DNA from: Saccostrea cucullata
Taxonomy: Eukaryota
Length of the DNA stretch: 64,000 nt
Direction of reading: 5' to 3'
Assembly: GCF_032062105.1 (NCBI RefSeq)
Contig: NW_026941382.1
Span: 1 to 64,000 of the forward strand
This document shows positions 14,053 to 36,000 of the stretch, one piece after another. Numbering within the stretch: position 1 is the first letter of the stretch; every line of letters begins with the position of its first letter. The notes under the pieces are model-generated. The model saw only the letters and a list, made by a program, of their open reading frames with translations. It was not told the DNA's origin and made no database searches. The position numbers were made by a program, and so were the translations under genes.

Positions 14053-17000
14053 TCATAAATGTGAATTTTCTAATTTCTTAAAACTTTTTGGTTCAATAAA
14101 GTCAGAAACATCAACATATGCATGATTGGTATGTCCATTTGCACGTAAATGTCCATTTTCTTCTAACGATTCTTTACTATTTAATTTGGCTTTATTCACT
14201 GGTGGACCTAAAATATAAATTATTGCATGAATCAGAGAAAGGTATTTAGAAATTATCACTGCCTTTAAGTTACTCTAACAACACCCTCTATTCATGTATA
14301 TTAAATAACCAATATAAATCGTCTTTCAAAAAGGTTAATCATGTTACATGTAAAATAAAATTTTAAGAAAATCTCATATCCAAATTAAACAGAATACCAT
14401 TTTCTATTTAATATCAAATCTTTCTTCTTCCTTTTTTTAATTTACAGTAATTAAGTTAGGATAAAAAACATAAATGTACATACCAATGTAGCTTAACAAG
14501 ACCGGTAGAAATATCAATCCATGAGTAGCACCATAAACGACAATTGCTAAGTACATTCTGAAATAAAACACCTGGAAAAGCTGCGATTTTGCGAAGGCTA
14601 GGACTATAATTCCGCCCAATTTTGTCAGCGTAATACCGCTTAATACCTTTAAAAGAAAAAAGTCATAGATATCTCATTAAAAATACAACAATTTATAACT
14701 TATGAATTAGAAACCTTTGAAGGAAAAGAAAGAATGAGATTTTAAATAGATAAACGTACAGAACTGCCCATGTGAGCAACTGCATCTTTTGCTCTTTCGA
14801 CTTTGTCTCCGTGGTTGCTGACGGCGAACGCCCTTGTTATGTGTGCACAAAATTCAACAGATATTCCTACAGCCTGAAAGTATGAATTTTTAAATTCATT
14901 GAGAACATTTTTAAAATTATAAATCCTACCTGTATGAAATAGTTTAAAATGCAAGATACACATTACATCATTCAGACTTTAATGAAGCATACATACAGTC
15001 TTGAATCGTTCAAAGGTAGAAAGTGAGTTTTTATTTTTCAAAATTGAAACATTCCGGGTTATATGCCACTACTAAACTGAAATTTCTAAACATGATTTTA
15101 GAAAACCTTACCATAACAAGGTTGACCAATGAAACGGCATTTATTGAGATGTTCCACAAGGACATAAATCCTAGAATGTCAATCACTATCATAGTTATGG
15201 TCATGACCACCATCAAAGCGGAAATGATGTCAAATCCCAGTAATACAAAGGTCACAACAAAAATGGCGGCAACACATATACACAAGTTTTGTACCGTATC
15301 TTCAACAATCGTCAAGTATTGCTCGTAAAAGACGTAGAATACGCTAAAAATACAAGAAAATGAATCAAAAAAGAAAATTTAAAGAAGATGAAATGTTGAA
15401 TGGGACATTTTTTAATAAAAAAGGGAACGTAAGATACTAAATTCTAAAATGATTTTACATGTATTTACCTGTACGGAAAGACTTTAGTCGAATTCCCTCC
15501 TGTTTTTAATTTTAACATGGTCGTCATATTGTCTGCTACTCTCCTTGCTTCTAATAATCCAGTGATGTAGTCCTTGCTTTCTTTCATTATGGAGTGATAA
15601 GTCATGAAATAAGTGGCTGAGAAGGGATAAAATAGAAAACGGTACAGTTACTAAAAAGTTAATCAACATGAACAAAATGTCACTCACGCGTGGTCATTCT
15701 GTAATAATATCGAATATTCCTACCTCCAACGGCCTTTTTATCATTTTTCAGATTTACTGCGCTCCCATATGCGGCATGCCCCCTAATTTAAAATAAAATG
15801 AATTTAATCATAATGTCATAGAAGACCTATGATAGTATGAATGAACACATTTATGATGAATATATGAAGAGGCTTTGGTATAAAGGAATAAATCATTACC
15901 CCTTTGCACATTTTATCCCTGGATTGTCTTTTAAATACCAAGGTAAAAATTTCATAAAGTCTTGAGAGACAGGCCGGCCATCAACAGTTTCACGAACAGG
16001 ACACGTTAGACAACTTGTGTTATCCACTGAAACATATTTGAAGTGTGTTAATAAAAGTTTTACATTCATGCATGATAATTGTTATATATGCCTATAAGTT
16101 GCAATAGATATAATCAGGAACCGTATTAATTTCCTGAATAAATTACCTGTGGCTGCACAGAAATCTCTGGAGTTGTTGTAGATCCGACAACATGGGGGAT
16201 CTCCACCAGGTCTTAACCAATCAAAATAGTCGTCTATCCATGCCGACGTCGGGTGAGCAATATAAGTGCTAAGAACAAGGTTAATTTTTTTAATATATGA
16301 GAAATAGCTGATACTTTTCATTTTAATTAAAAAAAAACAGGGTCATGTATGACCCAAGTCTTTTTTTAAATAAAAGTTTCGTTTATCATGCAGTTCATTT
16401 TGCTTTTACCCTCAGTTTATGAATCATGTGTTAAATAATAAAAAAAAAAGTACAAAAGAGTTTTAAGTGTATAAAAGTTTACTCACTATTTGGCTTGTTT
16501 TGCAGCTGTGCTAATCTGACCCGCCACGGAATCCTCGGGACAACCTGTGGCCCCGCAGACCAAGTTCTGACCTTCCTTTGTTGTGTAATCTACACCGTCC
16601 TCAACAACAAAGTACACCGGGGCCCCGACATGTAAGTACTCACTCAGGTTCCCGAAATAGTCAAGTACATACGAGTCCTATTTTAAAGAAATCATTTACT
16701 AAATGGTCAGTTAATATATTACATAGAACTACATGGATATAACGAACAGTATTCAAGCTCAAAAGTCCACTTAACAATACAAACAAGAGCAGAGTTAACA
16801 CGGATCTTAAAACACTGACAAGGTATTCTTTATTTTTCTCTTTTCAAAAATGGTATATTCCAGTCGTAACAAAAGTGAATACTGAGTATCTCCTGTTAAT
16901 ACTCACATCTGGCATGGAAAGCTTTTGATCAAGCCCAATCTCTATTTTATGAATCTGAGATACGCTGAAGCAGAAATATCCAACAAACACTATCATCTGG

Positions 17001-20000
17001 AGTTGAAAAAAAATGTATGAGGGGATTTTAAAAATCTTTTTTTTATTTTATATATATGTATGTATCTGAAAACAATTAACATAGCAAAAGGCGAATCTTA
17101 CCACCACTGGTCGAACAACTTTGGAAAGCAAGGCCTTTGAATAAAAGTTTTTGAATACTTTAAAATGAATTCCTTCAGAGTTTCTTTCTTTCTTTGTTTT
17201 ATCCAGTTGTACACAACAGCAAATATCCAGTCTACTGCTCTAAAATTGACAAATAAATATGGATAGTTTTTTTTACATATATTTTCGTTATGGAAAATAA
17301 ATGTTCTGATGCAGTTTGTTATAGGAAAAACTAGTTTACTTACTTCTTCTCTTTTGGCATCCAAAGTCATAATTGCAACAAAAACAGTTATTTGAAACAG
17401 GAAATCTAATAAAACTGCCATGGCTGAGTACAGTGAAAATACTCGCACTGCTGGCATATCAGTCAGAGCACCTACAAAGAAAGATGGAATCGATCATATT
17501 TTGGTAAATTTCAATGCCTTTTAGTTGTGTTAGAAGGATATTGATTAAAAGTATCCTTAAGGTTATCATTCCAAAAAAAAAAAATACCCACCCAAGAAGA
17601 AAGCAAGTGATTCAGCACAGCTGGCCAGAAGCATGCTTGGTCCAACTTTCCCCAGGACTCTTCCGATTCTGTCCTCAAGCTCCTCACCAACATGTGCTTC
17701 ATCTCTCTGTAGAAGAAACATCATGTATAAAAACTGGATATTGAGCGTGATTTAAACCTTTCTAGACAACTGAGAGTTTTTTTACTTAATGTTCACGAAG
17801 AACAATTCTACAATACAGATAATCAAGCTAGTGCTGTAGATACCTGGAAAGCTTGTACAAGGATGAAGATGTTGTCGACTCCAACAGCCAAAACCAGGAA
17901 AGGAACAACTTCAATGATGATTAGTGTGGCAGCAACTCCACAGTAGCTGAACAGACCCAGGGACGAGGACACAGATAGCAGTACAATGCAAACTCCACAC
18001 AATCCAAGGCTCGTTTTGGAAGTAATCTGGAGAACATTGTATAAAGAAACTGAATGACATCTGGTTTAGAAATAAAATTAGGATACATTTTTGAAAAAGT
18101 GCGTAAGAGATGTAGGATGCCCAAAAACTGTAAAAATGTCATGCAGTTATTGATAAGTTGAAAGGCATTATATCTAGGATAAATATACATGTAATCTTGT
18201 ATTATTAAATTTAATTCTTTGGTTGCTCAGTTTTATTAACATAAAATACTAACGGTATGCTTACATTATTTAGTAAACAACACTGACAAAGGAATGGGAA
18301 ACTTACAAAGCATCTTGAGCATTGTCCAAAGTTCCCCAGTGTTATACTGATATACCCAAACATGACTATGTAACTAATAACTATCGTCCAAACATCTGAA
18401 GCACTCTCACGCTGGATTTCATCTTCAATGGAACGCTACGAAAAAGAAAGAATGGCTAATTTATATTTACACAGAAAAAGTGGAAGAAGTATGAGAAACT
18501 CGCGGAAGCCTTTTTTATACTGCAAAAAGTTTTATAATTAAATTTTGATGCGTAACAATCTTTTCCTCGATAAGTGGGTAAGAACAATTAAGAATAAATA
18601 ACAGATCAAAGGAGGATTTTCTACAAAATAAATGACATTATCATTTATTATTAATCCTACCTCAGCTGAATAAGCAATGATCATATCAGGGTCGGAGTAG
18701 TTCTTCATGAAATTTAGAAATTCTTTCTCCCAAGCCTTAGCTTTTTCATTCTGTGCTTCATCGACGTGGTTGTTAACAACGAAAGTGATGACCATTGCGG
18801 TGGATTCATTGTAATTCTCACCTGTCGGGAAAAATGGTAGGTAATTTAGAAAAGAATTCAAAACTCTGATTATCCTTGTAAAACAACATGCTCGATGGAA
18901 GATTATTTACTTGTTTCGGTAATGATAATAATTGAGTAGCTGTTTTTACGTTTGTTTAATTGTTGACAACTAGCATTTACCTGTGAATCCTCCAAGAGAT
19001 ATCCACGGAAAGATTGGCTGTCCACTGGCTCCTAAACATGACATGTCTAGATGGTGCTGGTCTGATACAGACGCCGGAGCTCTGCAAGTTAGTTATTGTA
19101 TATAAAATAAAAGTGAGCTTAAAATGAAATTGCCATTTCGGTTCTTGATTATGGAGGTTCTATTACAGTGCAAGACTATGCAATAAAGATTTTGACACTT
19201 ATTGTGATTTCTTAAAGATTAGGGTCTCGCACATTACCTACATTTAATTTCCAAACTATAAATCTTAAATTTCCTTTCCTTCTTTTGAGAGATATTTTTT
19301 CAATAGGTATACGTCAACTATAATATATGTTTAATAAAAAAATATAATGGGTCAGTTATGTGTCTTTCTGATGTATCCCATACCTTGCGCAATCAGAGAA
19401 ATGATCCAAGTAGTCTCCTTGTAGAAAGGTATGTGTATATTGATCATATTTGATTTTATCTAGCCTTGTATGGTTGTTCTGCCAATATTCCAGTATACTT
19501 TGAATTGTACATTGAGTATTGTCAGGGGCCAGGGGCTGAAAACAGATGTCCTGAAGTGTCACTTTCTTTCCTTTGTAGTATGCTTGTATATTCTGAATGC
19601 TTAGCTGAAGATCCAGAACCTGAAATTAATATATTATGACATTATTACATTCGAAATCTCTCTCTCTTTCTGTATATTTGGGCCTCTGTTATTTGTATAC
19701 CTTAGAGTCATTCATACATAAAACGAACCTTGTGTAGAAAGGCTTTATCGAATATAGAGGTGTAATTCCAGTAAAGACCATATTGCATTCCAGGGACTTC
19801 GTGTCTGACACCTGTAGCGTTTTCGGGTCGTGTGATGATTAGTTGCTCGGTCCGATAAAATGGTCTGCAATTTAAAATTCAATATATCTACGACACATGT
19901 AGAAAATAAGTGTACTTCTTCTCAAAACTTCTACTATTTATCTTAATTTCAACTATAAATATGAATATTCAAATTTTGAATCCTTTGTTAAAGAAAAAGA

Positions 20001-23000
20001 TTTACCCAAAATGGTTGTCGAAGTAATTCTTTTCGAGTCTGGCCCTGCTCTTTTCAGCTGACCAAAGCTTTACTGGACTTGTGGTCACTTTGAACATCAC
20101 TATTCCAACAGAAAAGACAGCTCCCAATATGATGCCAGCAACGATTATCTTTAAAGGATTCAAAGCACAAAACCTGCCCCAACGATTGAAATTGCTCTCC
20201 AAACTCCTTTCCATCCACAAACCCCATTTCTGAAAACAATTTCCTTTTGGTTCTTCCTTGAACGCCTCCTTCTTCTCTGTTTTGTTTTTACCAACAATAT
20301 ACACATCAGTGTCTCTATTTATTTGTTTTTCCTTTTCACCAGAGGTTCCACGTTTATAAAAGAAAGAAACTGTGACAAAGAGGATGAAAAAGAAAGAAAA
20401 CACGATGAAGGTAACGAGTGATGCAAAAAACCAACAGTCCACTCCGTCTATAGTACACGGTATTTTGGGCTTTGGAGGGGGCGGGAGGGGAGCACACATA
20501 GATTGGCAATCTTGACAACTGCATGCTGACAAGTTCCCATATTTTTTGTAACAAGGGGTTGTACTGTAGTTCATTGGATGGATATCAGCTGTTGAAGTGT
20601 TTTGTATGTGATAATTGATGGTGAATGGGGTTTGTCCATTGGCAGTAGAACCCATGAAGTCCAACCAGTTCTGCACAGTGCAATCAGCGGCAGGTTTTCC
20701 ACAGATGACGTCTAAGGCTTTTGCGTTTGTACTTGGCATTTGAACATCTTTGCAGGAATTGTACATTCCGTATACGTAATCTTCACTCACATGGTAATCC
20801 ACCGCCGTTATTATTTCACGTGGATCGGTGGGGTTAAATATATTTTGCATCTTTGCCTTTACTTTGACAAAGTCTGCTTGGTTGGGATCGCACGTGAAAT
20901 AGCAAAAGAGGTATAGAAAGTTATAGTAACAAGAAGGACATCGGAGCAAAAGCTGTTCTGGCACACCCATGTTCTTCTTGAATGATCTCAGTTGGTCCAA
21001 GTCGCAGCATGTTAATGGTTGATCGCCTGAAAACAGGTTTTCATGAAATTAACTTTTGAAAAATTGAATCATTGTACCTGATTTTTGAATACATTCTCAT
21101 ATTTTGATCCTTTTAATAAGTATAAATTTGAGTTCATGTTTTAGAATACATTTTTATTCATATTTTTTAAATTTCGATAATTTAAAGAAAAGAAATCGAA
21201 TGAATTTACTTTCTTTAATATTTTTGTTTCTATAACTTTTATTTCATTTCGATCTATAGATGCAGCATGAAAACCATAGTATTTTATGGATTTGGAAATA
21301 TTCAATTTTCTTTTCTTTTTTTGAGAACCGATTGCATAATAAAATTTACCTATAAAATACATTGAAAAGTAAACTTTAGAATCAAATGTTGTCGCAAACC
21401 TAAATATAGCACGAAATTTAATAAATTTTATTAGATGTAAGTGGTAGTGATATTGCAAAATTTTATCACATTTGCTTGTCAACATTAATTATATAATATA
21501 AACACAAGTAGGCGGAAAACTTATATGATAACTGCACATGCATTTTACATAATATATCTCTCAGATTTTAAAAATTGATAAAAGTGTACATGTATAAATA
21601 ATGATAAGTGTCTGTCGATGAATATTGAAAGAATCTTTCGCCTTTAAAATATACTAATCTGTTTTGACTACTTCCATCAAGAGACGTAGGTCAAGGAGAC
21701 CGTCCCCTAAAAGTAGTTGTCTTTTTTATCATTTTAATCTTAATTTGAAAATGGAAGTAGAAGAAATATCTGCGCATAATAACCAAATTTGACACAATAC
21801 TAAGCGCTTGACATATCGAATGGAAAACAAAGAGGGTCAAAATTTCAAAATTCGTAATTCAATCATCTGCGATTACGAAACTCACTTGTGACCAGATTTG
21901 GACAGTATGTCCGCAGAATGTCAAGCCCCTCTGTTTCGTTCATTACTTTTGGTGATCCTTCATATTTACAGTTCAAATTTCCTGTGGGTCTGGCGAGACA
22001 TTCCCCATACATGGAACATTTGCCGGAATTCTGAAATTATAAAGTAACTGTACTGTATTTTGTTTGTCTTAAGGACAGATGATACAAACACTTTTTAGGA
22101 GACTTAATATTATGTAACAAGTTTAGAAAAGTGAATTCTAAGAATTTTTTCTCCTTGGACTTGGAAAATGAAATACATGTAGACTGATTTGTCAATATTT
22201 GATATTTTATTGAGATATTAACTAAGATTTTACAACTCTATTGTTTTTTTTCAAGTCCAAGGAGAAAACATTTAAAGAATTACCTACATTTCTAAACCTT
22301 TGACATGATATTAAGTCTCCTTAAAAAAAAACAACTGTTTGTATCATCTGTCCTTTATGTGTAGGATGAAACGTGGAAAAGTCATTTTCTCTTGTAACAA
22401 TGCAGTAGCACCAATGTTCTGAGGTAAAAGGGTTTCATATCTACATGTAAAAGAATTTGCGTTTTATTAAATCTCGTATATCATCTAAATGTTTTTTTAA
22501 TATGAGACCTCATAAGCCGGACATAATCTATGAGCTATATTACCTGTTATTAAGTAAGCGCAATTGACACTCGATGATATATATTCGAAGTCTGGCCTTT
22601 TTTTTATACGATTATCTTAACTTTGATTTTATTTTGAATAATTTTATCTGCCATTGGCCTGTCATTCCCTTTAACTCGGTCATTTTTAAGGTTAAGACGT
22701 ACTAACTTATCGAATTCCAGAGTTAACTGATAAATATTCTTCGCTTGAAAATGTTACTTCGCAGTTTTTACTATTCCAAATGATTTAGGTTTTGACAAGG
22801 GTTTTGAAAAATCTGTTTTAAAGAAAACACAAAATTCTTTTTAAAATATTTAATGTATATTTCATATTTTCATTTTTCTTCAATCCGAATTGTTATCACA
22901 CTAAAACATGATATTGAAAATATAGTATTAAAACATTATAAGAATACTTTAAGACTCGTCAAAAATTTATTTTTTAAAATTGTCTGCAACGTTCATTTAT

Positions 23001-23331
23001 CAATTTTTCAGACGGAATTTAAGTATTTGTTTTCGAAGACTTTCCCGTATAAAAGTATTCATTCTAAAATTATTAACCTGTTTCATGTTTGATTGTTAAT
23101 ATTTTCTCTAAAATACAACTATTGACGAAAGACTTCAAGTCTACACTAAAAATATTTTCTCAATATTATTTTTTAAAAAGACACCAAGGAAGTAAAGGAG
23201 TATCTACCTGACAATTGGTAGTTATTAATCAATCGAAATTCAACATGTTCTCTTCAACAATCCCTTACCTGTGCAAAAGTGCATTTCATGAACACCAGAA
23301 CAATAGAATATCGTAAATATTCTTTCTTCAT
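14053..23331 (-). CDS. NPC1: NPC intracellular cholesterol transporter 1-like, paralog A; complete, 22 coding exons, ~1318 aa
   Basis: Exons (GT-AG, phases consistent, total 3957 nt): 23331-23269, 22030-21886, 21026-20006, 19864-19729, 19619-19384, 19081-18981, 18821-18661, 18435-18307, 18026-17844, 17706-17592, 17471-17344, 17239-17102, 16996-16907, 16677-16487, 16268-16147, 16026-15900, 15782-15724, 15616-15469, 15343-15112, 14873-14760, 14646-14484, 14207-14053. Signal peptide, Cys-rich NTD (CSMYGEC, CCD, RCPSC, NGQTPF, CSCQDC), [16 protein letters not shown], sterol-sensing domain ([11 protein letters not shown]), [27 protein letters not shown]. Confidence 0.95.
22073..22353. mobile_element. 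Fold-back MITE in intron 1 of NPC1-A (Kolobok-like by flanks)
   Basis: ~100-bp imperfect inverted arms ggacagatgatacaaaca...ctccttggacttg / caagtccaaggag...tgtttgtatcatctgtcc, flanked by TTAA and TTTA. Confidence 0.75.
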
Positions 23332-23869
23332 AGTTGTCTTTGTTAACGCTACAGCATCCATAAATCAAAAAATGAAGAATAACATGTGAACAGTGTGTTT
23401 TCTCGATCTTTGTCCTCAAGACCTATATCGTACGATGGTGTGACACATGGAGTGGACTGACACTATGAATGGGTTGATCTAAGGGGAAGGTAGTTTGAGT
23501 GGAGGCGATAAGAGCACCACATTAGCAACATGATTATTCCGATTTGTTTGTTTTGGTGTCGTCATTGGAGTAGACTTGGGAGGAATTGGATAACTTGGGA
23601 GGTCAAAAATATGCGGTCAATGGAATTGTTCTACATTTTTCCTGTATATGTATTGGTCGATTAAAAAAAGTTCTTTGACTAAATTTTACCAAAACTGAGA
23701 GACAGTTTGTTTGCTTTTCTTAATTAGGTGATTAGTTTTATTGTTTCAAAACGTAAAACATTTACAGAGTCCCGTGTATTTCCGGTCATGTTTCTGTAGC
23801 ACTTTGAATTAAAATTATAAAAAGAATAGCAGCATTTGAGAATAATTGAAAATAACACCACTTTTTTGA

Positions 23870-26377: not shown

Positions 26378-27953
26378 CTTAAATAGGCTTTCTATTTTCA
26401 ACAACAGCATTTTTGAGCATCAACAGACAACAGGAAGATATATATTTATAAAATGGAAGGTTATCAATACAAAATTGCAGAATTTTATCATCAGAAAATA
26501 AAGAGCATTGAAAATAGATAAAACAGTACTGTTAAAACATGTAATAATTATATGTTTGAATCCAATGTTAAATATACATCATAACAAAATTTTCATTAAC
26601 TTCTAGGAACACTATAAAATGATATCCTTATCTCATTTCCTTATATCTCTTCTGAAATGTTCCTTGTTGTTAGCATGCCGATTTTTTTTCAATAAAAAGG
26701 AGAATTTTTCCTTATAGCTAACCATATCATATGAAGACACATTTTACTTTGATTTCTGTCCACAATTTACTTGTGGTAAAATAAGGGTAATTTTAAGTTC
26801 CCCGTTAACCTTTAATATTGATATTTGGTTTTTCCTACCCAATGTGCTCAGGTGACCAATAAATCCCACAGGCCTCTTTATTCAAATTCTGCATAAATAT
26901 TAAACGATTCAAGGTTTGTGTCCGCATAGGTATAAAACATGCGCATGTAAAGTATATTCAGCAGTATAATGGCATAATCTGCAAAGGTTTTATGACGACT
27001 TGGTAAACCTTGGCTTTACAAGTTTAACATAAAATTCATTAGCTGTCTTTTCTTCAAAATGGCTATGAACAAGTATGTCTTCGCCGTGTTTTTGCTGTTG
27101 GCAGTAATGCAAACACCAGTGAGTAATCAATGAATACAGCTGTATATATTCTTAATCTAAAACACTCTTATTTAAGGAAATAGATAATTAACTTCTTATG
27201 GATGGGTAATGGACAGAAAAGGAATGAACGGAAGGAAAACGACTTCAGTGCTCTTAGTTTGTGAAAGAAATTTTAGTTGTATGGCAGCAGATTTCAACTC
27301 TCAAGTTTTCAGGTGTCTGAGGCTGTTCTCTCAATATATGTACTGGTTGTTTTTTTTTTACTTCTGATCACGGTTTCTGTTCTCACTTCAAGTTGTAATA
27401 CTGTTAAAAGAATTATAACTCTAATAAAAAGTTGACGAATCACACTAAACGTGTACTTATATGTACATTTCTAAATTCACGCAATAGTCTGTACAGTACA
27501 AAGTAGTTAGGAAATTGGAAAATGCTCCTGATAGTGTTTCAGATATATCACCAGATTTTACAACCCCTTACTAATAAAAGGTTTAAATAGGCTTTTTATT
27601 TTCAATAGCAGTAAGAGCATCCTGAGCACATACAACAGGAAGATAAATATTTTTGAAATGGAAGGTTATCGATAAAAAAGTTTTGTCAATGAAAAATTAG
27701 TATTGTTAAAACATATAATAATTATATGTTTTAATCCAATTTAAATGTATATGGTAGCAAAATTTTCATTAACTTCTTGGAACACTATATAATGATATTC
27801 TTATTTAATTTCCTTACTTCTATTCTGAAATTTTCCGTGTTTTTATCATGCCATTTTTTTTCAACTGAAAAGGAGAATTTTTCCTTATAGCTAACCAGAC
27901 ATTATGAAGCCATATTTTACATTGATCCCTGTCCACAATTTACATGTGGTAAA
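26378..27953 (+). repeat. Direct repeat pair (~26378-26782 and ~27583-27953) bracketing exon 1 of the soluble NPC1-derived gene
   Basis: Both blocks run ttaaataggcttt...caacaggaagata...aaattttcattaacttct...gtccacaattta...gtggtaaaat. Confidence 0.85.
26931..26937 (+). promoter_or_regulatory. Candidate TATA box of the soluble NPC1-derived gene
   Basis: TATAAAA ~125 bp upstream of ATG 27059; the AT-rich background makes this weak. Confidence 0.3.
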
Positions 27954-30900
27954 ATTATTGAATAAATTTATGTTAAGAAAAAGATTTCTAATCTTTTACT
28001 TTAGAGACATCAAAATCATTTTATTCAAAATATTTATATATGTGTTTGTCTGTTATATACGGGTAAATATGTAAAAAGCAAATATTACCATACCTTTATA
28101 AAGTATTTCAAAGGTCATAGGTTACTACATGGTCTAATCACACGATGCAATAAAGACTTGTTGCATGCTTTTCATGTACAAAAATGTGCAAAATGCGCGA
28201 GTAAAATTATATTTCCTTTATTCACACTTTTTGCTGTTAATCATATTGTTGAAGACGTGATTTTAGGCTGAAAGGAAAGGTTATCAAATTTAATCTGAAA
28301 ATGTAAACCCTCTTAAAAATCGACTCAAGACTAAGAATGATGTTTTTCTTATATGATAACATTGATTTTACAAAAAAGCTACACAGAAAGTCTAACTTTA
28401 GTTGTAAAAATTGTAAGTTGTAAATATTGTTTAATTGTAAAGCAGATACTAGAATTATAAAAAAAAATGCAGTTTATATATGATATCTTATTATTAATTT
28501 ATTGTTTGTTTGAAGTATAAAGGGGCTTGGTAGAACACTTTGCGACCGATATATATCTTGTCATAAGGATTCTATCCAATTTTGAATTCCTTTATAGGTA
28601 TGGTAATCGAATTCAATTTGGTTCTTGGGGATATTAAAATCATTAAAACTGACATACGGTTTTGTGGAATCTCCATTTATTGGAAAGAAATCATTAGAAT
28701 ATGAACAAATCCAAGTTTCTTCCATGCCATTGTAAAAATAATAGGTACTGATCAAGACAATGTTTTACACAGTCTTTGTCAGCAGGAGCCAGAGCTTATT
28801 GATCATCCATATAAACTTTACTTCTTTGGTCACTTCTGAATTAGAATGAATGGTTTTCATATTGCTTTCATTGATTTTTTTCCTCCAAGAATTCTTTTTG
28901 CTCTAAATTATTCTAAATTATAATACAAAAACAGGTGAATATTCAGTAGTTTTAGATTAAACCTAATTTTTGAATTTTATGCTACGTAAAAAAGGCTTAA
29001 GGTTTTATTTGATGAGGTTTTGCATTCAAATATGTAGCTTAAGAGTAAGAATAATAAAGCCTAAAATACGACTACAGTACATTTGTATAATGTATCCATT
29101 CCCAATAATACCTGATCATCGTCAATTGATTTGGTAGAAGGCAAGATATATAATTTATATATATTTCATATATATTTATAAAATGATGATCTTGTGAATT
29201 ATCATCTTGTGGAGATTTCTTAATTAAGGTGGAAGTTAAAACTGATTTCTACCTTTAAAAAAAACTTTCACAAGAGGATAAATCCGTCATAGATTTTAGA
29301 GTCAGTCTATGCTAAAAACTCTAGTTCCTTCCCTTTTCTAGTTCATTTAAAAATAATTATACAACTACAAAGCTCCAGTTACCAATCTTCCACTTTATTT
29401 TCAGGTCAGCGTTAATGGTCAGTGTGTAATGTACTCAGAATGTGAACAAACCCCATCAGGTCCACTCCCATGTACCTACAGTGGTCAACCCATCACTCTA
29501 AAGGACCAGAAATCTCTACAAATTTTGAAAAACTACTGTCCTGATTTATATGAAGGTATTAATACGTAGATTTCACGATTTTCTTTTAAATAGTTTTCTG
29601 TTATGTTGAGAACACCACGTGGTTAAATTTAAAACATCTTTAATTCAGAGGCGCAAAATTATTTTATTCAAATTATATCATATATCTGATATCTTGAGCT
29701 CTATTGCTATATAGACTTTTAGATAGTTTTCTATTAGAGAGAAAATAGTTAAATTTAAAAGACCTTTCACTTAGGTCTTTATTTCATTCATATTATATTA
29801 TATTATACATGTGATATCACTATTTATTAAACATGCAGAGAGGAAATATCTTCATACCTGTTTCAAGTTTTTTTTAAGTCCTTACATTACTAAATCACAC
29901 AATGCAATAATATCCACGTAAAAAGACCTGCTTTTCATGTAAAAGAAAAATGTACAAAATACGCAAAAGGATCGTTTTATCATAATTTGATAGTGTTAAT
30001 CAAATTGTTTACGGCTTGACTTCAGGACCAAATGTTTTCATTGATAATTTTTTAAAAATTAAAAAAATATCTTTTATAAATTGTCTCTAGTCAAGTGAAC
30101 AAGGAAAATGTATTCCTGATATGACTACATGTATAATGCTTTAACAAACAAAAAAAGATGCAAGGTCTGATTTTAATTGTGATATAGCCTCATAGCCTTA
30201 TAGAAATATTATGTTTATGACTGAAACATTTACCAATTTTTAATTTATCTCTGAATACCCGGAAATGATATTTTCACTGTTAATTTCTCTCTTAATGTCT
30301 TCACTATTAAATTTCAGGTAGTAACACAAAAACATGTTGTGATGAAATGCAACTATCCAGCTTGGTAAAACAGACGAGACTCGTAGAACAACTATTATCA
30401 AAATGTCCATCTTGTCTACATAATTTTATGGCCATATTTTGCGAAATGACCTGCAGTCCAAAACAGAACGCCTTTCTCAAAGTTATGAATCAGGGCAAGA
30501 CAGTACATTCGCTGGATTACGTCATATCACGTGACTTTCTCTACAGCATGTTTAATTCCTGTAAGAATGTTGAACTCACAAGTGCCAATGATAAAGCCTT
30601 TTCAATCATTTGCGGCAGATCAGCCAGTGAGTGTACACCAGAGAACCTTTTAAGCTACCTTGGTTCGACGTCAAATGGTCATACCCCATTTGAAATTTCC
30701 TTTATCGAGACGAACGATAATATAACAATAGGAGGACGGGATTATCACCCAATGAACCAATCTACAATCCCCTGTTCAGAATCTTGTTCAAGTCGTGATT
30801 GTGGGGTTCCAAAGCTACCTAGACCACGCCCATGTCCTGGTGGGTCATGTTTTGATGGACAAATAAGGTATTCATTTAAAACAAATTGTTTAGAAGACCT

Positions 30901-32523
30901 CGAGATTTTTTTTCATTACTTGTATGCATAATTTCTGCAATTAGTATTTGAATACTTTTTCTATTTTAGTTTTGTTAATTCATCACGAAAATGGACTATT
31001 TGAGTTTTTGTTTGAAGTAAGTTTTAAACATTCAGTTCTTAATTCTATTTCTTGTATTTCAGACCAATTTACAGGCAAGAACAAGTAGTGATAACCAGGC
31101 CACACAACCATACTGTTGTCAGGCATTATCTTCCCCCGCCATCAAATGATCTTATGAATTACACGTCGTTATTTGACAAGAGTTTTCTACATTTAGTAAG
31201 TTATTCCACCCATACTCCTGTGGTTCATTCATAAACAATGACACCTGATCCTATATATATATATCTTTTTAGTGAGACCTTAAAAACTGAAGTATTGTCT
31301 TACGGTAGACGTTAATATAATTCCTAACAGTTCAATGGCCGTTGGTGCCGGGTAAAAGTCAAAACGTGAAGCCCTTCATCGGTATATGGTGACATCTGTA
31401 TATGGAGATATATTCTCGAATTGGACGTAAAACAGCATACAATTAATCAATCCTATATCAGTTGTAGCTGAGCCAGGTCCTCTAATCTAAAAAAGAACAA
31501 TGAGAATGATTTGCGAAAAGGAAGCTTTTTGGATTATAGTCTTTAGGTCCTAGGATCTATATAAATCAATACAGTATTTAATAACGTTATTTGTTTTCAG
31601 CTTTTAGATTTTCAACAAAGCATAAGAAATATTTCCGTTAAGTTCGAAAACCAAGACATTGGATTGAAGGATATTTGCTACAGACCACATTATGGTAGTG
31701 ATTCTTGTGCTGTATTCAGCATTCTTGAGTACTGGCAGAGTAATCACTCAAACATCGATAAAATCAAAATGGATCAATATGGATTTTTTGTCCTTGCAGA
31801 TTATTTGGATCATTTTGCATCTTGCGCAGTGTAAGTTTGCAATCCTTCTTTGGAAATTTTTTTCTACTAAAAGCTTTCATTGTTTTAAAAGTTTGGTTGC
31901 TGAAAGTTAGGGCACTATTGAAAATATATACGGTTCCACTACAAACAAATATCGTGGGGGGAGTGGGGTGTGGAAAAGGAGAATACAAGTATAAAATTTC
32001 ATCAGATTCACGTACTGCTTAAATGGTTTATAAAGTTGGAGAATAACATTCAGCAACGATTGCACACCTTCAACAGAGATTTTTTTTAATTTCATTTCAT
32101 TTTTTATCACAGTGTATCTTCAGAAATAGATACAGTGGGTCTAAACATGTCTTGCTCGTCCTCTGCAAATCAAGCCATTTATCCAAATATGGTTCTAGCC
32201 GGCTATGGAGGTAAAGTTTTTTTTGAACATTTTTTACAAAGATCTTGCAAAAATTGATATCAAGAAATTAGTGTTACTATGAAATCTCATATAGGTAACA
32301 TTATCCTTTAATAACTTTTGTTACAGGAGAAAATCAAGTAGAATATTTCAACAGTTCTACTGCTTTTGTCATCACGTTTTTGATCCAGAATTATCAGGAT
32401 GATCGCATGAATGATGTTGCACGTGCGTGGGAAGGGGAGTTTAAAAAATTCGTGCAAAACTTCCGCAGCCCCAACATGACTGTCTCAATGAATATGCCAC
32501 TTCTGGCTGATTCGTTTTACTAG
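27059..32523 (+). CDS. Transmembrane-less NPC1-derived protein: signal peptide + N-terminal sterol-binding domain + Pro linker + middle luminal domain; 7 exons, 472 aa
   Basis: Exons 27059-27118 (MAMNKYVFAVFLLLAVMQTP), 29405-29555 (VSVNGQCVMYSEC...YCPDLYE), 30318-30867 (KTCCDEMQ...KCPSC...NGHTPF...CFDGQIR), 31063-31195 (PIYRQEQVVITRP...FLHL), 31601-31830 (LLDFQ...DICYRP...DYLDHFASCA), 32113-32210 (DTVGLNMSC...VLAGYG), 32327-32523 (AFVITFLI...ARAWEGEF...PLLADSFY*). All GT-AG, intron phases identical to NPC1-A introns 1-6, 1419 nt with no stop or frameshift. Confidence 0.9.
28518..28895 (-). mobile_element. Decayed Penelope-like reverse-transcriptase fragment in intron 1 of the soluble NPC1 gene
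   Basis: Across frameshifts it reads LAPADK..NIVLISTYY...NWI...NPY...KCSTKPL, matching the Penelope RT-upstream pattern VPADKA.NNIV.VC..YY / WIPKLHK.PYK.R.IAGS.KCSTKPLS (recalled). Confidence 0.55.
31300..31452 (+). mobile_element. 5'-truncated SINE
   Basis: ...ggtgacatctgtatatggagatatattctcgaattggacgtaaaac...aatcaatc resembles the reverse complement of the 3' half of the SINE at 10880. Confidence 0.55.
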
Positions 32524-33089
32524 ACATACATAAACATGTATTTGTAACAACAGTCTTATAAAATACATCATTGCTATCTTTGTAGCGATAAAAAAATGGT
32601 TGTGGGTTTTCTTTTTTTAAATTTAACTTCTATCTTCTTTCTGTGAATGTTCAGCAATCACTGTCCAAAATTTGTCAGCGCATTTATTTCATTACTTTAC
32701 ATCATCTGTTTTATTTCTAAAAGATTTTTAAAAGTGATATTTTGATAACAAAAAGTCATTCAATAGCATTAATTCTTATGAAAATCTCAGAAAATCCTTT
32801 AATTCTTCAAAAAATAACTTTGATATTTAGTTCAGTGTCACTGAGCTTGATGAAAACAATTTTCCAGCTTATGACATTAGTCATCTAGAGAGCTAGAGAC
32901 CCAGCTTAATCAATCAAAGTCATAAAACCGTAAAAATACCTATTTTACATCGAGCTCGGAAAAGAATGGACTATACGATCAGTGACGTTGCTTATTGTGA
33001 CGTCACAATTGCTTTTCATGTTAGAAAGCGCCGAGTAGCGATCAATGCATGCTTAGCAAAAATTTATTACACTTTTACCTGGCACTTTG

Positions 33090-36000
33090 ATGAAAACAAT
33101 GGTAAGTTTGATTTTATCAATATTTATATTACGATATTTGATTTTAAATAACATTGATAGCTGTTTTATTAATTTCGCGAAAAATCGTTTTAGAATTGAT
33201 TTTTCTAATAGGATGAAGTAGCTATACTGTAACAAACAGCTGTTAAAATAATGATTTTTCAATTAGCAGAATATAACTTTTTATCTGTATTTTTCCCCTT
33301 CATTTTTACTCTTTATTTACAAGGGACGGAAATTGTAGCATATAATAGTTATAAAAGATATATGTACATCAATTATTGAACATCAATGAAAAATAATTTT
33401 CATCGGGTGCGGTTACGGATATAGGCGTTTCTATGATGGCGTTTTTTCTATTATGACGTCATAATTGTTTCGATAAAAATTAAGGGCTGTTGATAGTCAC
33501 AAAGTATAATAGGTTTGCCAAAGTAAAAATGACGGTAAACAAATTTAAACATTAATTTTTAATTTTAAAAAGTTATTTTTTTAAAAGTGTAACCTTCATA
33601 ATAAATAATGTCAAAGATATTTTTCACTGTAGGATGTGAAAGAAGGAGAGGAATACGGAAATGGTAGAAAAGTCAATGAAGGACTGAGCCAAATGAAAGT
33701 AAGTCTATCATTTTTTTTTTTAAGTTCAAAGATTTTATTTTAATGCACAAACAATTGTTCCAGAATAATATGTCTGAATTAAAAAAGGAGTTTTGACAAA
33801 AACAATAGTAACTAAAAAGTCTAGTAATAGGTTCCTTTTTTATTAAGTAGTTGACTTATGGATTTTACTCTTTTGTAGGAAACTGAGAAAGAAAAATCAA
33901 ACATTTCTCAGAACTACATGAGAAGAGACGATTTCACAGACATACCTGAGAAGATTTTAAAGGTAATTTCCATATTTTCATTTCACTCACTCACTCATTA
34001 AAAGACTAGAAAAACTGGAGTAAGTTGCTGAGAGTTTTTTAAAAGGTCAAATTTATTTTTTACCGTTTATGTTGCATTTGATTTATATTTTGGTGTATTT
34101 ACAGATTTATCTTCCGGACTGTGAAATCATAGCAAGAAAGCTGTGGAGGATCAAAGAATACGCAGAAGAATTGGACACAATTCAGACCTTTAAGAAAGGT
34201 TACCATATAGGAACTTCTTGACCAAAATGTTAAAATGCGTGTGTATTTTAAGTGATTTTCAAATGGGCTAATATTCACAGCCATTCATGATCATATTTTA
34301 ATCTAGAGAATTTAAGACTAAATGTCGAAATAATGATCATAGGTGTATTCCACTGTGATTGGTATCAAAAGCAAAAATTTTGATACTTCAGCCTTAGATG
34401 GCACTGAAATATTTTCATTTACTTACTCAAAAAAAACTAGAAAAATTGGAGTAAGTTGCTGAGAGTTTTTTAAAAGGTCAAATTTATTTTTTACCGTTTA
34501 TGTTGCATTTGATTTATATTTTGGTGTATTTACAGATTTATCTTCCGGACTATGAAACCATAGCAAGAGAGCTGTGGAGGATCAAAGAATACGCAGAAGA
34601 AGGACACAATTCAGGTAAGTGGCTTCAAAATGTTAAAATGCGTTTGTCCATTTTAAGTGATTTTCAAATAGGATAATATTTTCATGATCATATTTTAATC
34701 TAGAGAATTTAAGACTAAATGTCGAAATAATGATCATAGGTGTATTCCACTGTGATTGGTATCAAAAGCAAAATATTGATACTTATTTTACTAAAACCGG
34801 TACTTTTTACCACAATAAAAACTTGAATACAAAACATTGCAGAAAATAATATATATAAAGTATATTTCATTTATTTAAAGGGGTAGCTTGAACAAAGGAA
34901 GCATCTGAAGATTTTAGCCATTTTTGCCAGAAAACGCAGAACATGTTTATTTCTTCCTCACCTTGAGGTAAGGAATTTAAAGATAGAAATATAAAATTCA
35001 GCAGATGTTTCTAGACGAAAGTAAAATGTAACTGGCTAATGGCACAAAACCTCTGTATTTTGAATTTCACTAAGTGTTTCATTTGGCCATAATTTCCCAG
35101 AGTTTTAATAATCATAGTATCTTAAAAAGCTTCAGCTAAAGAGTACCATTTTTCATTTTAGCCATTTTTACCAGAAAACGCTGAACATGTTTATTTCTTC
35201 CGCCGATGGAGTCGGGATGACTTCAGATATTATGCGCCTTGGCTTGAGACAGTATATGTAAGTAACTTTATGTTTATATTCAACTTAACATACTAACAAA
35301 TGAAGCTGCAATTTACTTTTCAATATTTTATGGCTGTATTATGTATATTCAAATTATAAAATAACAATGGTGTCGAATTAATTCATTTCACCTTTTTGTA
35401 TTTTCTTCTAGGAAGTAGAACCATGGAATAATGTATTAACAGTAAATAACCAAGATGACAACAAACCAGAATTTGCTAGCGGGGAGGAGTACCTCGGTTG
35501 GTTGGGTCGGCAATTACCATGCCTCCAGGTATGTAAAGGTTGAAAAAACATTTGCATGTAAACTTAATTTTAAAAAAATCAGCCGAAAAGATAATTCGAG
35601 TGAATGTAGAATGAATACTATTTGTGCTTGATTTCAGGAAATCAACAAATTTGAGTCATGATAATATTTTAGCGGTACGTTTGAGCATGTTCTTTAATTT
35701 TTATTTTTTTTTTAGCCATTTTTGCCACAGAATGCAGAACATTTCTATTTTTGCCGTCGTTGGAGTCGGAATGATTTAAGATATTACGCGCATTATCTTG
35801 ACACGCATCTTGTAAGTATAGCTTTTTATTACATAAAGCTTATAGCATATCAATTTTATTTCATAATTAAATCATAAATACCATCAACAAATGAAAGTAA
35901 AAGGCACTATTCATTTCATTAAATTTAGATAAAATTTAAAACAACAAGGCTTGTGATTTATGAATCCAATTTTAATAGCCTATTGTAATATTTCCAGGAA

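What the first reader, a model, noticed from the sequence alone, without database searches (positions are those of the whole stretch)
27059..32523. A soluble, transmembrane-free NPC1 derivative: sterol-binding NTD fused directly to the middle luminal domain
Seen: seven exons splice to an uninterrupted 472-aa ORF with NPC1 intron phases. Exon 3 is 550 nt versus 1021/1081 nt in paralogs A/B, because an in-frame internal deletion removes TM1, the cytosolic loop, TM2 and the PVKLWS segment, joining ...PRPCPGGSCFDGQIR|PIYRQEQ (A: ...YFDNHFG|PFYRTEQ). The ORF stops in exon 7, just before SIEDE and the sterol-sensing domain. There is a signal peptide, about nine NxS/T sequons, and no TM, KDEL or GPI-like tail. 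Established: in NPC1 the NTD binds cholesterol, the middle luminal domain docks NPC2 (and filovirus GP), and canonical NPC1/NPC1L1 are 13-TM proteins. Inference: two separate edits trim exactly the membrane-bound and membrane-proximal parts while a heavily diverged ORF stays open, which argues for selection on a secreted/luminal sterol shuttle, an NPC2 partner or a decoy receptor. I do not know of a described protein with this architecture.
Basis: partly seen in the sequence, partly recalled or inferred. Interest (0 to 1): 0.92.

Follow-up and report, generated by a model that had tools for sequence, protein, structure and literature searches.

The report
Membrane-free NPC1 offshoot in oysters
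This oyster gene is a real, expressed and conserved cut-down copy of the cholesterol transporter NPC1 that keeps only its two luminal domains and no membrane part; similar copies arose more than once in molluscs, and no paper in the open-access library searched describes them.

Summary
Seven AG/GT exons (27059-32523, + strand) give a 472-aa ORF. It has a signal peptide, the NPC1 N-terminal domain, a 30-residue linker and the middle luminal domain (MLD). It has 9 sequons, no other hydrophobic stretch and no downstream NPC1 exons.

The model is identical to RefSeq XP_062596321.1 (Saccostrea cucullata, "NPC1-like"). Two intronless contigs from a sister Saccostrea lineage follow the predicted junctions and end in a 3'UTR. 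dN/dS is 0.24-0.27 across three Saccostrea lineages, against 0.09 for other exons of the full-length neighbour.

- The architecture is not unique. TM-free NTD+MLD proteins are annotated in scallops (with a GPI-like tail), Patella, Haliotis and Littorina.
- On a tree they sit with the full-length NPC1 of their own lineage. One origin for all is rejected (AU p = 5e-8), so the form arose repeatedly.
- The oyster form is old (long stem branch).

Function is inferred: a secreted or luminal lipid-binding module that keeps the NPC2-docking loop. The oyster NTD has N41P and W27M in the sterol-hydroxyl site, so the ligand is uncertain. No paper found describes the architecture. Verdict: a new variant of a known kind.

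The parts
27005..27058 (+). 5'UTR (minimum extent)
   Evidence: The sister-lineage contig L004 aligns from window 27005 and L003 from 27029, up to the ATG.
27059..27118 (+). Exon 1: ATG plus the hydrophobic signal peptide (MAMNKYVFAVFLLLAVMQTP)
   Evidence: GTGAGT donor. It is the only hydrophobic segment in the protein.
29405..29555 (+). Exon 2: start of the NPC1 N-terminal domain (GQCVMYSEC...)
   Evidence: Pfam NPC1_N, E = 2.3e-6. The cDNA junction matches.
30318..30867 (+). Exon 3 (550 nt): the rest of the NTD and the Pro/Cys linker. It lacks the TM1, cytosolic loop, TM2 and neck codons that exon 3 of A (1021 nt) and B (1081 nt) carry.
30829..30867 (+). Deletion junction, peptide PCPGGSCFDGQI(R). 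The CPxGSC motif is conserved in all oyster-type relatives.
   Evidence: The 3' end of the exon aligns to YFDxHFG of A and B with the same donor phase. The motif is kept in S. echinata, the L003/L004 species, P0005 and P0129.
31063..31195 (+). Exon 4: start of the MLD (PIYRQEQVVITRP...)
   Evidence: Pfam NPC1_MLD. 74% identical to B and 60% to A.
31601..31830 (+). Exon 5: MLD core, including the protruding-loop motif [13 protein letters not shown]
   Evidence: Pfam E = 2e-18. Loop conservation.
32113..32210 (+). Exon 6: MLD
32327..32523 (+). Exon 7, terminal: end of the MLD, a 9-codon read-through tail (PLLADSFY) and the TAG stop at 32521-32523. The ancestral donor is lost.
   Evidence: The tail differs in length and sequence in the three Saccostrea lineages.
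32524..32600 (+). 3'UTR (approximate). Its conserved block TGTATTTGTAACAACAG... is shared with S. echinata and with contig L004.
   Evidence: L004 ends in an A-run 13 nt after an AATAAA.
14440..23361 (-). Paralog A, a full-length NPC1-like gene (RefSeq XP_062596312.1, 1328 aa). Its ATG at 23361 lies head to head with C, 3.7 kb away.
48640..62904 (-). Paralog B, a full-length NPC1-like gene (RefSeq XP_062596314.1, 1330 aa), tail to tail with C. Its exons 1-2 lie beyond the window.

Best explanation
Window 27059-32523 (+) is a working protein-coding gene of the oyster Saccostrea cucullata. It descends from a duplicated full-length NPC1 gene and differs from it by two changes. An in-frame deletion inside exon 3 removed TM1, the cytosolic loop, TM2 and the membrane-proximal neck. 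Loss of the exon-7 splice donor ends the protein a few codons after the middle luminal domain, and no later exons remain.

The product enters the secretory pathway through its signal peptide and is N-glycosylated. It has two independently folded domains, the NPC1 N-terminal lipid-binding domain and the MLD, joined by a flexible Pro/Cys linker. With no anchor and no retention signal, it should be released into the lumen of the endolysosomal or digestive system, or outside the cell.

Mechanism (inferred). The protein keeps exactly the two modules that carry out the NPC2-to-NTD hand-off in NPC1: the MLD docks NPC2 and the NTD takes the lipid. It therefore most likely acts as a soluble acceptor or carrier of sterol-like lipids working with ML-domain (NPC2-like) proteins, without feeding them into a membrane.

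Comparable membrane-free derivatives arose more than once in molluscs. Some carry a GPI-like tail.
For: Shown:
- The gene model is open, and all its splice sites are AG acceptors and GT donors.
- The model is identical to RefSeq XP_062596321.1.
- Two intronless contigs, L003 and L004, from different runs of a sister lineage (about 94% nt identity) carry the same 472-codon ORF. They are colinear with all seven exons at the predicted junctions and run into a 3'UTR, with no TM exons.
- The S. echinata ortholog has identical lengths for exons 3-6 (550, 133, 230, 98).
- dN/dS is 0.265, 0.235 and 0.249 in the three pairwise comparisons, with dS 0.18-0.39 and Fisher p <= 1e-10.
- Pfam finds NPC1_N and NPC1_MLD only.
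- Against PDB sequences, residues 12-245 match human NPC1 10-256 and residues 248-463 match human 394-604.
- The AF2 model has two confident domains and a disordered linker at 225-254. Foldseek gives TM-score 0.80 to 3gkh (NTD) and 0.87 to 5kwy_A (MLD bound to NPC2).
- Q79, P202/F203, the hydrophobic 175/176 pair and 14 NTD cysteines are kept. The MLD loop GFFVLADY is near-identical to that of paralog B.
- The only hydrophobic stretch is the signal peptide, and there are 9 sequons.
- ML-domain (NPC2-like) exons exist in the genome.
- No TM-exon remnants lie downstream.
- The same architecture occurs in scallops, Patella, Haliotis and Littorina. A single origin for all ten sampled TM-less proteins is rejected (AU p = 4.7e-8).
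Against:
- The oyster NTD has Pro for human N41 and Met for W27. From memory of the NTD crystal-structure paper (Kwon et al. 2009), these residues contact the sterol 3-beta-hydroxyl end, so cholesterol binding may be weakened or the ligand may differ.
- dN/dS is about three times that of exons 13-20 of the neighbouring full-length gene (0.09; a different part of the protein, so only a rough comparator). Constraint is therefore partly relaxed.
- In full-length NPC1 the C-terminal luminal domain packs against the NTD and MLD, and it is absent here.
- Secretion, glycosylation, ligand and NPC2 binding are all untested.
- AF2 gives no confident relative orientation of the two domains (pTM 0.51).
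Confidence: 0.65

Rival explanations
1. It is a regulator or decoy rather than a carrier. The soluble MLD (with or without the NTD) would sequester NPC2-type proteins, or bind a pathogen or toxin ligand that otherwise uses membrane NPC1. It would thereby damp lysosomal sterol export or block an invader.
For: - The MLD is the better conserved half (dN/dS 0.18, against 0.35 for the NTD).
- Its protruding loop is nearly identical to that of paralog B.
- The NTD sterol-hydroxyl residues N41 and W27 are changed.
- From established knowledge, the MLD is the surface used by NPC2 and by filovirus glycoprotein (PDB 5kwy and 5f1b, both among the Foldseek hits).
Against: - The NTD is still under purifying selection, with its disulfide framework, Q79 and P202/F203 intact. 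A pure MLD decoy would not need that.
- No pathogen of molluscs is known to me to use NPC1.
- Nothing here distinguishes sequestering from shuttling.
Confidence: 0.2
2. It binds a non-sterol hydrophobic cargo. The NTD fold is shared with folate and riboflavin receptors and has been retuned in oysters. The protein would then be a secreted carrier for some other dietary or signalling molecule.
For: - N41P and W27M in all three Saccostrea lineages, while other TM-less proteins keep N and W.
- A weak Pfam match to Folate_rec (E = 0.0026) and a Foldseek match to FOLR2 4kmy show the shared fold.
- The long stem branch (about 1.0) suggests a burst of change after the gene arose.
Against: - Most pocket-lining positions checked are conserved with sterol-binding NPC1 (Q79, L83, F108, P202/F203).
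- Paralog A, a full-length transporter, also has W27M.
Confidence: 0.1
3. It is a transcribed partial duplicate with no function of its own, a slowly decaying gene relic.
For: - It is a truncated copy sitting between two full-length paralogs.
- The C-terminal tail is unconserved and shifts frame between species.
- Constraint is weaker than on the full-length neighbour.
Against: - The ORF is intact in three lineages separated by dS up to 0.39, and dN/dS is about 0.25 with p <= 1e-10.
- A conserved new CPxGSC motif sits at the junction, also in relatives only 38-52% identical over exon 3.
- The same architecture is retained independently in several mollusc lineages.
Confidence: 0.04

Closest known systems
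NPC1 / NPC1L1 (13-TM sterol transporters of the Patched/RND superfamily)
   Same: Homologous NTD (human residues 10-256) and MLD (human residues 394-604), with 30-36% identity, the same folds, shared intron positions and the same signal peptide logic. The gene lies next to two full-length paralogs.
   Different: It has no TM helix, no sterol-sensing domain, no C-terminal luminal domain and no cytosolic tail. It therefore cannot move a lipid into or across a membrane by the NPC1 tunnel mechanism.
Laboratory constructs: soluble NPC1(NTD) (PDB 3gkh/3gki) and soluble domain C/MLD (PDB 5kwy, 5f18, 5hns)
   Same: Each domain is known to fold, be secreted and work on its own: the NTD binds sterol, and the MLD binds NPC2 and filovirus GP. 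The oyster protein is in effect a natural fusion of these two constructs.
   Different: It is natural, encoded by its own gene, and joins both domains through a conserved Cys/Pro linker. In all the papers found by search, 'soluble NPC1' means an engineered fragment.
TM-free NPC1-like proteins of other molluscs, annotated only as 'NPC1-like'. Examples: Argopecten XP_069106602.1, Pecten maximus (P0156), Mizuhopecten (P0157), Patella vulgata (P0158), Littorina XP_070208614.1, Haliotis rubra XP_046580963.1.
   Same: Signal peptide, NTD and MLD with no TM1/TM2. The deletion always ends just before the conserved intron that precedes P-x-YR-x-EQ.
   Different: - The junction sequences differ.
- The scallop proteins add extra 3' exons encoding a C-terminal hydrophobic, GPI-signal-like tail.
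- Patella keeps the neck segment.
- On the tree most of them group with the full-length NPC1 of their own lineage, not with the oyster protein.
NPC2 and other ML-domain soluble sterol carriers
   Same: A soluble, secretory-pathway, glycosylated lipid-binding protein of the lysosomal or extracellular space, so the same proposed kind of job.
   Different: The fold is unrelated (ML beta-sandwich against Cys-rich NTD plus alpha/beta MLD). Here NPC2-like proteins are the presumed partner, not a relative.
Folate receptors / riboflavin-binding protein
   Same: They share the Cys-rich NTD fold and are soluble or GPI-anchored ligand carriers (weak Pfam and Foldseek matches). The scallop GPI-like tail parallels FOLR1/2.
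   Different: The relationship is very distant, they have no MLD and they bind different ligands.

Membership tests
NPC1/NPC1L1 sterol transporters | N-terminal Cys-rich sterol-binding domain (Pfam PF16414) | tested here: met
   Pfam E = 2.3e-44 on exon 3 and 2.3e-6 on exon 2. Foldseek to 3gkh TM-score 0.80. 14 of the 18 cysteine positions checked are kept.
NPC1/NPC1L1 sterol transporters | Middle luminal domain (PF22314) | tested here: met
   Pfam matches on exons 4, 5 and 7 cover profile positions 10-211 of 216. Foldseek to 5kwy_A TM-score 0.87.
NPC1/NPC1L1 sterol transporters | Thirteen TM helices including the sterol-sensing domain (PF12349, PF02460) | tested here: not met
   No hydrophobic 19-mer above 1.21 outside the signal peptide. 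No such exons on the + strand downstream, or anywhere in the locus. The contigs L003 and L004 end without them.
NPC1/NPC1L1 sterol transporters | C-terminal luminal domain | tested here: not met
   The ORF ends 9 codons after the MLD. The PDB alignment stops at human residue 604.
NPC1/NPC1L1 sterol transporters | Sterol-pocket residues of the NTD (human W27, N41, Q79, P202/F203; the list is from memory of the 2009 NTD structure paper) | tested here: inconclusive
   Q79, P202, F203, L83 and F108 are kept, but N41 is Pro and W27 is Met in all three Saccostrea lineages. Binding was not assayed.
Mollusc TM-free NTD-MLD proteins (unnamed group seen here) | Signal peptide + NPC1_N + NPC1_MLD, fewer than 35 residues between the domains, no internal TM | tested here: met
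   13 residues lie between the matched NTD and MLD stretches, against 100-220 in full-length proteins.
Mollusc TM-free NTD-MLD proteins (unnamed group seen here) | Common descent of the group (one origin) | tested here: not met
   The careful ML tree needs 7 changes of state, at least 6 of them forced by well-supported branches. The AU test rejects one clade for all ten proteins (p = 4.7e-8). Oyster plus scallop forms as one clade is not rejected (p = 0.18).
GPI-anchored or tail-anchored variant (as in scallops) | C-terminal hydrophobic signal | tested here: not met
   The oyster tail is PLLADSFY. The scallop proteins have 20-25-residue hydrophobic ends.

The most novel reading that the evidence does not exclude
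Molluscs have repeatedly built, from duplicated NPC1 genes, a free-standing 'hand-off module': the NTD plus the NPC2-docking MLD, either secreted or GPI-anchored. This would be a previously unrecognised class of extracellular or luminal sterol carriers. It would work with the expanded NPC2-like proteins to capture dietary sterols in animals with little or no sterol synthesis of their own. It would also show that the NPC2-to-NTD transfer step can run as a unit on its own, apart from the membrane transporter.
Probability: 0.3. Interest if true: 0.8.

Novelty: new variant of a known kind. Interest (0 to 1): 0.62.

Why it matters
NPC1 is studied as an indivisible 13-TM machine, and its NTD and MLD have been separated only in the laboratory. 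A natural, selected, transcribed gene that keeps just these two domains, and that appears more than once in molluscs, has three consequences.

- It gives a ready-made soluble system for studying the NPC2-MLD-NTD transfer step.
- It points to an extracellular or luminal branch of sterol (or other lipid) handling in filter-feeding and grazing molluscs.
- It shows that database entries named 'NPC1-like' hide a distinct architecture, which comparative studies of NPC1 copy number (for example in symbiosis or nutrition work) would miscount as transporters.

Tried and rejected
No RNA reads of this species were laid. Local scripts kept reading the whole window file as a BLAST subject, and I masked the places in the one script that cut that region out.
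- **The look-up of encoding contigs on the exact protein** returned nothing, because records of the window's own genome are left out.
- **The profile search with alignment A1** found only 6 proteins, so it did not widen the taxonomic picture. Whether Crassostrea, Magallana or Ostrea carry the gene stays open.
- **Joined model.** The joined exon model was never typed or sent. Pfam and the large search were run exon by exon by reference. Joined steps (PDB search, structure prediction, alignments) used the database protein P0154, which a script showed to be identical to the model. Exons were joined only inside local scripts, for frame checks, dN/dS and trees.
- **First dN/dS run for paralog B** was contaminated by wrong-frame matches and was redone with checked frames.
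- **Readings considered and rejected.** An alternative isoform of A or B is excluded by the opposite strand and separate locus. A hidden continuation into TM exons is excluded. A recent species-specific edit is excluded.
Full report
**1. The observation**

The window is contig C23519:1-64000 of a 1.17-Gb assembly. The stretch 27059-32523 was read, and all AG/GT sites near the apparent exon ends were searched.

One open 472-aa model results, plus a 471-aa variant that uses an AG three bases later in exon 7. The exons are 27059-27118, 29405-29555, 30318-30867, 31063-31195, 31601-31830, 32113-32210 and 32327-32523.

Pfam was run exon by exon, by reference. It gives NPC1_N (profile positions 2-219 of 244) and NPC1_MLD (positions 10-211 of 216) and nothing else of note.

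Two full-length paralogs lie on the minus strand:
- A runs from its ATG at 23361 to about 14440.
- B runs from 62904 to about 48640, and its exons 1-2 lie beyond the window.

Their models give exon 3 lengths of 1021 and 1081 nt, against 550 nt in C. Exons 4-6 are 136/236/101 nt in A, 133/233/101 in B and 133/230/98 in C. The lengths agree modulo 3, so the phases are shared.

The 3' end of exon 3 in C still aligns with A and B (CFDGQIR against YFDxHFG) and the donor phase is the same. The missing 157 or 177 codons (TM1, loop, TM2, neck) are therefore an internal in-frame deletion.

In exon 7, A and B splice after YSAE and YSSE. C has no GT there and runs 9 codons on to TAG.

No NPC1-like exon lies downstream on the + strand, even at E = 10.

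The protein has 9 sequons and 22 Cys. Its only hydrophobic stretch is the signal peptide.

**2. It is an annotated, transcribed and constrained gene**

A search of 1.8 billion representative proteins with exon 3 gave a 439-aa top hit at 78% identity with the same junction. That hit is Saccostrea echinata XP_061187964.1.

A second search returned P0154, XP_062596321.1 'NPC intracellular cholesterol transporter 1-like [Saccostrea cucullata]', 472 aa. A script showed it to be identical, residue for residue, to the model. The window is therefore S. cucullata, and RefSeq already holds this exact model.

The 90% cluster of P0154 holds two more 472-aa proteins, from Logan contigs of 1835 and 2081 nt. 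These contigs, L003 (SRR26159586) and L004 (SRR26159594), have the following properties:
- They are about 94% identical to the window at the nucleotide level.
- They are intronless and colinear with exons 1-7, breaking exactly at the predicted boundaries.
- They start 30-54 nt upstream of the ATG.
- They run into a 3'UTR. L004 ends in an A-run 13 nt after an AATAAA.

They are spliced mRNAs of a sister Saccostrea lineage, and they contain no TM-encoding sequence.

The S. echinata locus (L002) has exons of 550, 133, 230 and 98 nt, as in the window. Its RefSeq model merely misses exon 1.

Nei-Gojobori dN/dS values, with Fisher p between 1e-10 and 1e-17 for fewer nonsynonymous than synonymous changes per site:

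| Comparison | dN/dS | dS |
|---|---|---|
| S. cucullata vs S. echinata | 0.265 | 0.35 |
| S. cucullata vs L003 species | 0.235 | 0.18 |
| L003 species vs S. echinata | 0.249 | 0.39 |

The MLD (0.18) is more constrained than the NTD (0.35). Eight 3' exons of the full-length neighbour B give 0.09 at a similar dS of 0.37. This covers a different part of the protein, so it is only a rough comparator.

The post-MLD tail differs in all three lineages (LLADSFY, SDLFFVSRN, SV) through small indels. It is therefore a dispensable read-through.

**3. Structure and residues**

Against PDB sequences, residues 12-245 align to human NPC1 10-256 and residues 248-463 align to human 394-604 (E = 2e-73).

An AF2 model built on 14 TM-free relatives has mean pLDDT 75, with two confident domains and a disordered linker at 225-254. 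Foldseek gives TM-score 0.80 to 3gkh (NTD) and 0.87-0.89 to 5kwy_A and 8eus (MLD).

An alignment numbered on a mammalian NPC1 shows the following:
- Q79, P202/F203, the hydrophobic 175/176 pair and 14 cysteine positions are kept.
- C240 and C247 are lost, in both the oyster and the scallop TM-free proteins.
- N41 is Pro and W27 is Met in all three Saccostrea lineages, whereas the other TM-free proteins keep N and W.
- The MLD loop [13 protein letters not shown] is almost identical to that of B, while A has diverged there.

At the junction a new C-x4-C motif (CPGGSC) appears. It is kept in S. echinata, in the L003 species, and in two exon-3 fragments that are only 52% and 38% identical (P0005, P0129).

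**4. The architecture elsewhere**

Among the hits, proteins with fewer than 35 residues between the NTD and MLD and no internal TM come from these sources:
- Argopecten, Pecten and Mizuhopecten (507-535 aa, each with a 20-25-residue hydrophobic C-terminus that looks like a GPI signal)
- Patella vulgata and P. caerulea
- Littorina saxatilis
- Haliotis rubra
- several unnamed mRNA-sized contigs

All are named only 'NPC1-like' or left uncharacterised.

In Pecten, Littorina and Patella the intron before P-x-YR-x-EQ is at the same place and the deletion lies upstream of it. The junction sequences differ, however, and Patella keeps the neck segment.

A careful ML tree was built on NTD+MLD columns (40 rows, 27 of them full-length mollusc NPC1s). 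It places the TM-free proteins as follows:
- Littorina with full-length Littorina (support 100/98)
- Patella with Patella and Lottia (100/96)
- an unnamed unionid-like transcript with Sinanodonta (100/99)
- another unnamed one among imparidentian bivalves (99/94)
- the oyster form on a long stem (about 1.0 substitution per site) in an unresolved pteriomorph group

One clade for all ten TM-free proteins is rejected (lnL difference 391, AU p = 4.7e-8). Oyster plus scallop forms as one clade is not rejected (p = 0.18).

Genomic distances argue against gene conversion as the general cause. The Pecten copy lies 19 Mb from the full-length gene, while the Littorina copy lies about 52 kb from it on the same strand.

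The unionid-like transcript is 83-85% identical to a full-length Sinanodonta protein in both domains. It could be an alternative isoform rather than a separate gene, so I do not count it as firm.

**5. How it probably works**

*Shown.* The gene encodes a secretory-pathway, TM-free, two-domain protein that is transcribed, correctly spliced in a sister lineage, and under purifying selection.

*Inferred.* It has no anchor and no KDEL, so it is released into the lumen of endolysosomes or the gut, or outside the cell. From the NPC1 literature, the MLD docks NPC2 (PDB 5kwy) and the NTD accepts sterol. The protein therefore keeps the whole hand-off unit and most likely receives or carries sterol-like lipids together with NPC2-like proteins. 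Exons of such proteins are present in this genome.

The N41P and W27M changes make the identity of the ligand uncertain. Rival readings are a decoy or regulator acting through the MLD, a carrier of a non-sterol cargo, and a functionless relic. The last is close to excluded.

**6. Novelty**

Five searches of the open full-text library found no description of a natural soluble NTD-MLD protein. The searches covered NPC1 with oyster; NPC1 with bivalve and sterol; truncated, soluble or secreted NPC1; and domain terms. 'Soluble NPC1' always meant engineered domain C. One preprint on clams treats NPC1 only as the transporter. Subscription journals are not covered.

The proteins exist in RefSeq as automatic models. 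I therefore rate this a new variant of a known kind: a distinct, apparently undescribed domain architecture of the NPC1 family that arose more than once in molluscs.

**7. Limits**

- The joined exon model was never typed or sent. Joined-protein steps used the identical database entry P0154, and exons were joined only inside local scripts.
- Complex prediction was not used, because no unaltered whole NPC2 sequence was available.

Noticed in passing
window 3489-3890 and 8897-9307 (- strand): Two paralogous single-ORF sequences of 133 and 136 aa. Each has a hydrophobic N-terminus and a shared core (RIAAYKI.WFNG.WSGWFVPGVNDIDIKFN...HKF/YxICKDS). Neither has a Pfam match. They look like a tandem pair of small secreted proteins of unknown family.
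   Followed up: partly
window 40351-42502 (- strand): ORFs rich in Q/H/P/T repeats (QPQHAQ..., VTNQMSERHQxN repeated) with no Pfam match. They lie in the 16-kb gap between C and B. The same gap is only about 5.5 kb in S. echinata, so this may be inserted repeat or mobile DNA.
   Followed up: partly
L002:168-1088 (+), S. echinata: The 3' exons (equivalent to exons 5-7) of a second TM-free copy, 74-79% identical over exon 5, lie about 9 kb upstream of the ortholog. S. echinata therefore seems to carry a tandem pair, whereas the S. cucullata assembly shows only one C-type copy.
   Followed up: partly
G000:C13582:36117-39149 (- strand): A second B-like set of NPC1 exons gives the same identity values to C as B does. 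It is probably an uncollapsed haplotype of B in this 1.17-Gb, 23,869-contig assembly rather than another paralog.
   Followed up: no
window 14440-23361 (paralog A): A and its S. echinata ortholog sit on a long stem (0.72). A also has W27M and a diverged MLD loop ([10 protein letters not shown] in place of YGFFVLADY). It is a fast-evolving full-length NPC1 paralog that may have lost normal NPC2 docking.
   Followed up: partly
P0003 (Logan contig of 2407 nt): A 788-aa TM-free protein with two NPC1_N stretches plus one MLD. On the tree it groups with imparidentian bivalves. It is a further, more elaborate variant of the architecture.
   Followed up: partly
P0132 cluster (8 members, JGI metatranscriptomes and Logan): Proteins of about 508 aa with NTD+MLD, no internal TM and a hydrophobic C-terminal tail, on 2.0-2.3-kb contigs. 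In the first tree the cluster falls outside the mollusc clade, so the architecture may also exist outside molluscs. The organism is unknown.
   Followed up: partly
L005:28688-33124 (Pecten maximus): The scallop TM-free gene keeps the exon-7 donor and adds downstream exons. The last of these (33038-33124) encodes the hydrophobic, GPI-signal-like tail. This is a different solution for the C-terminus from the oyster read-through stop.
   Followed up: partly
L004:1436-2007 compared with window 32499-32539: The sister-lineage mRNA has about 540 nt of 3'UTR that the window lacks at the same place. The flanking UTR blocks on both sides match. This is an insertion or deletion in the 3'UTR between close relatives.
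   Followed up: no
window 29145-29184 (intron 1): An AT-rich, low-complexity stretch tripped the read laying filter. The tool itself says the filter also trips by chance.
   Followed up: no
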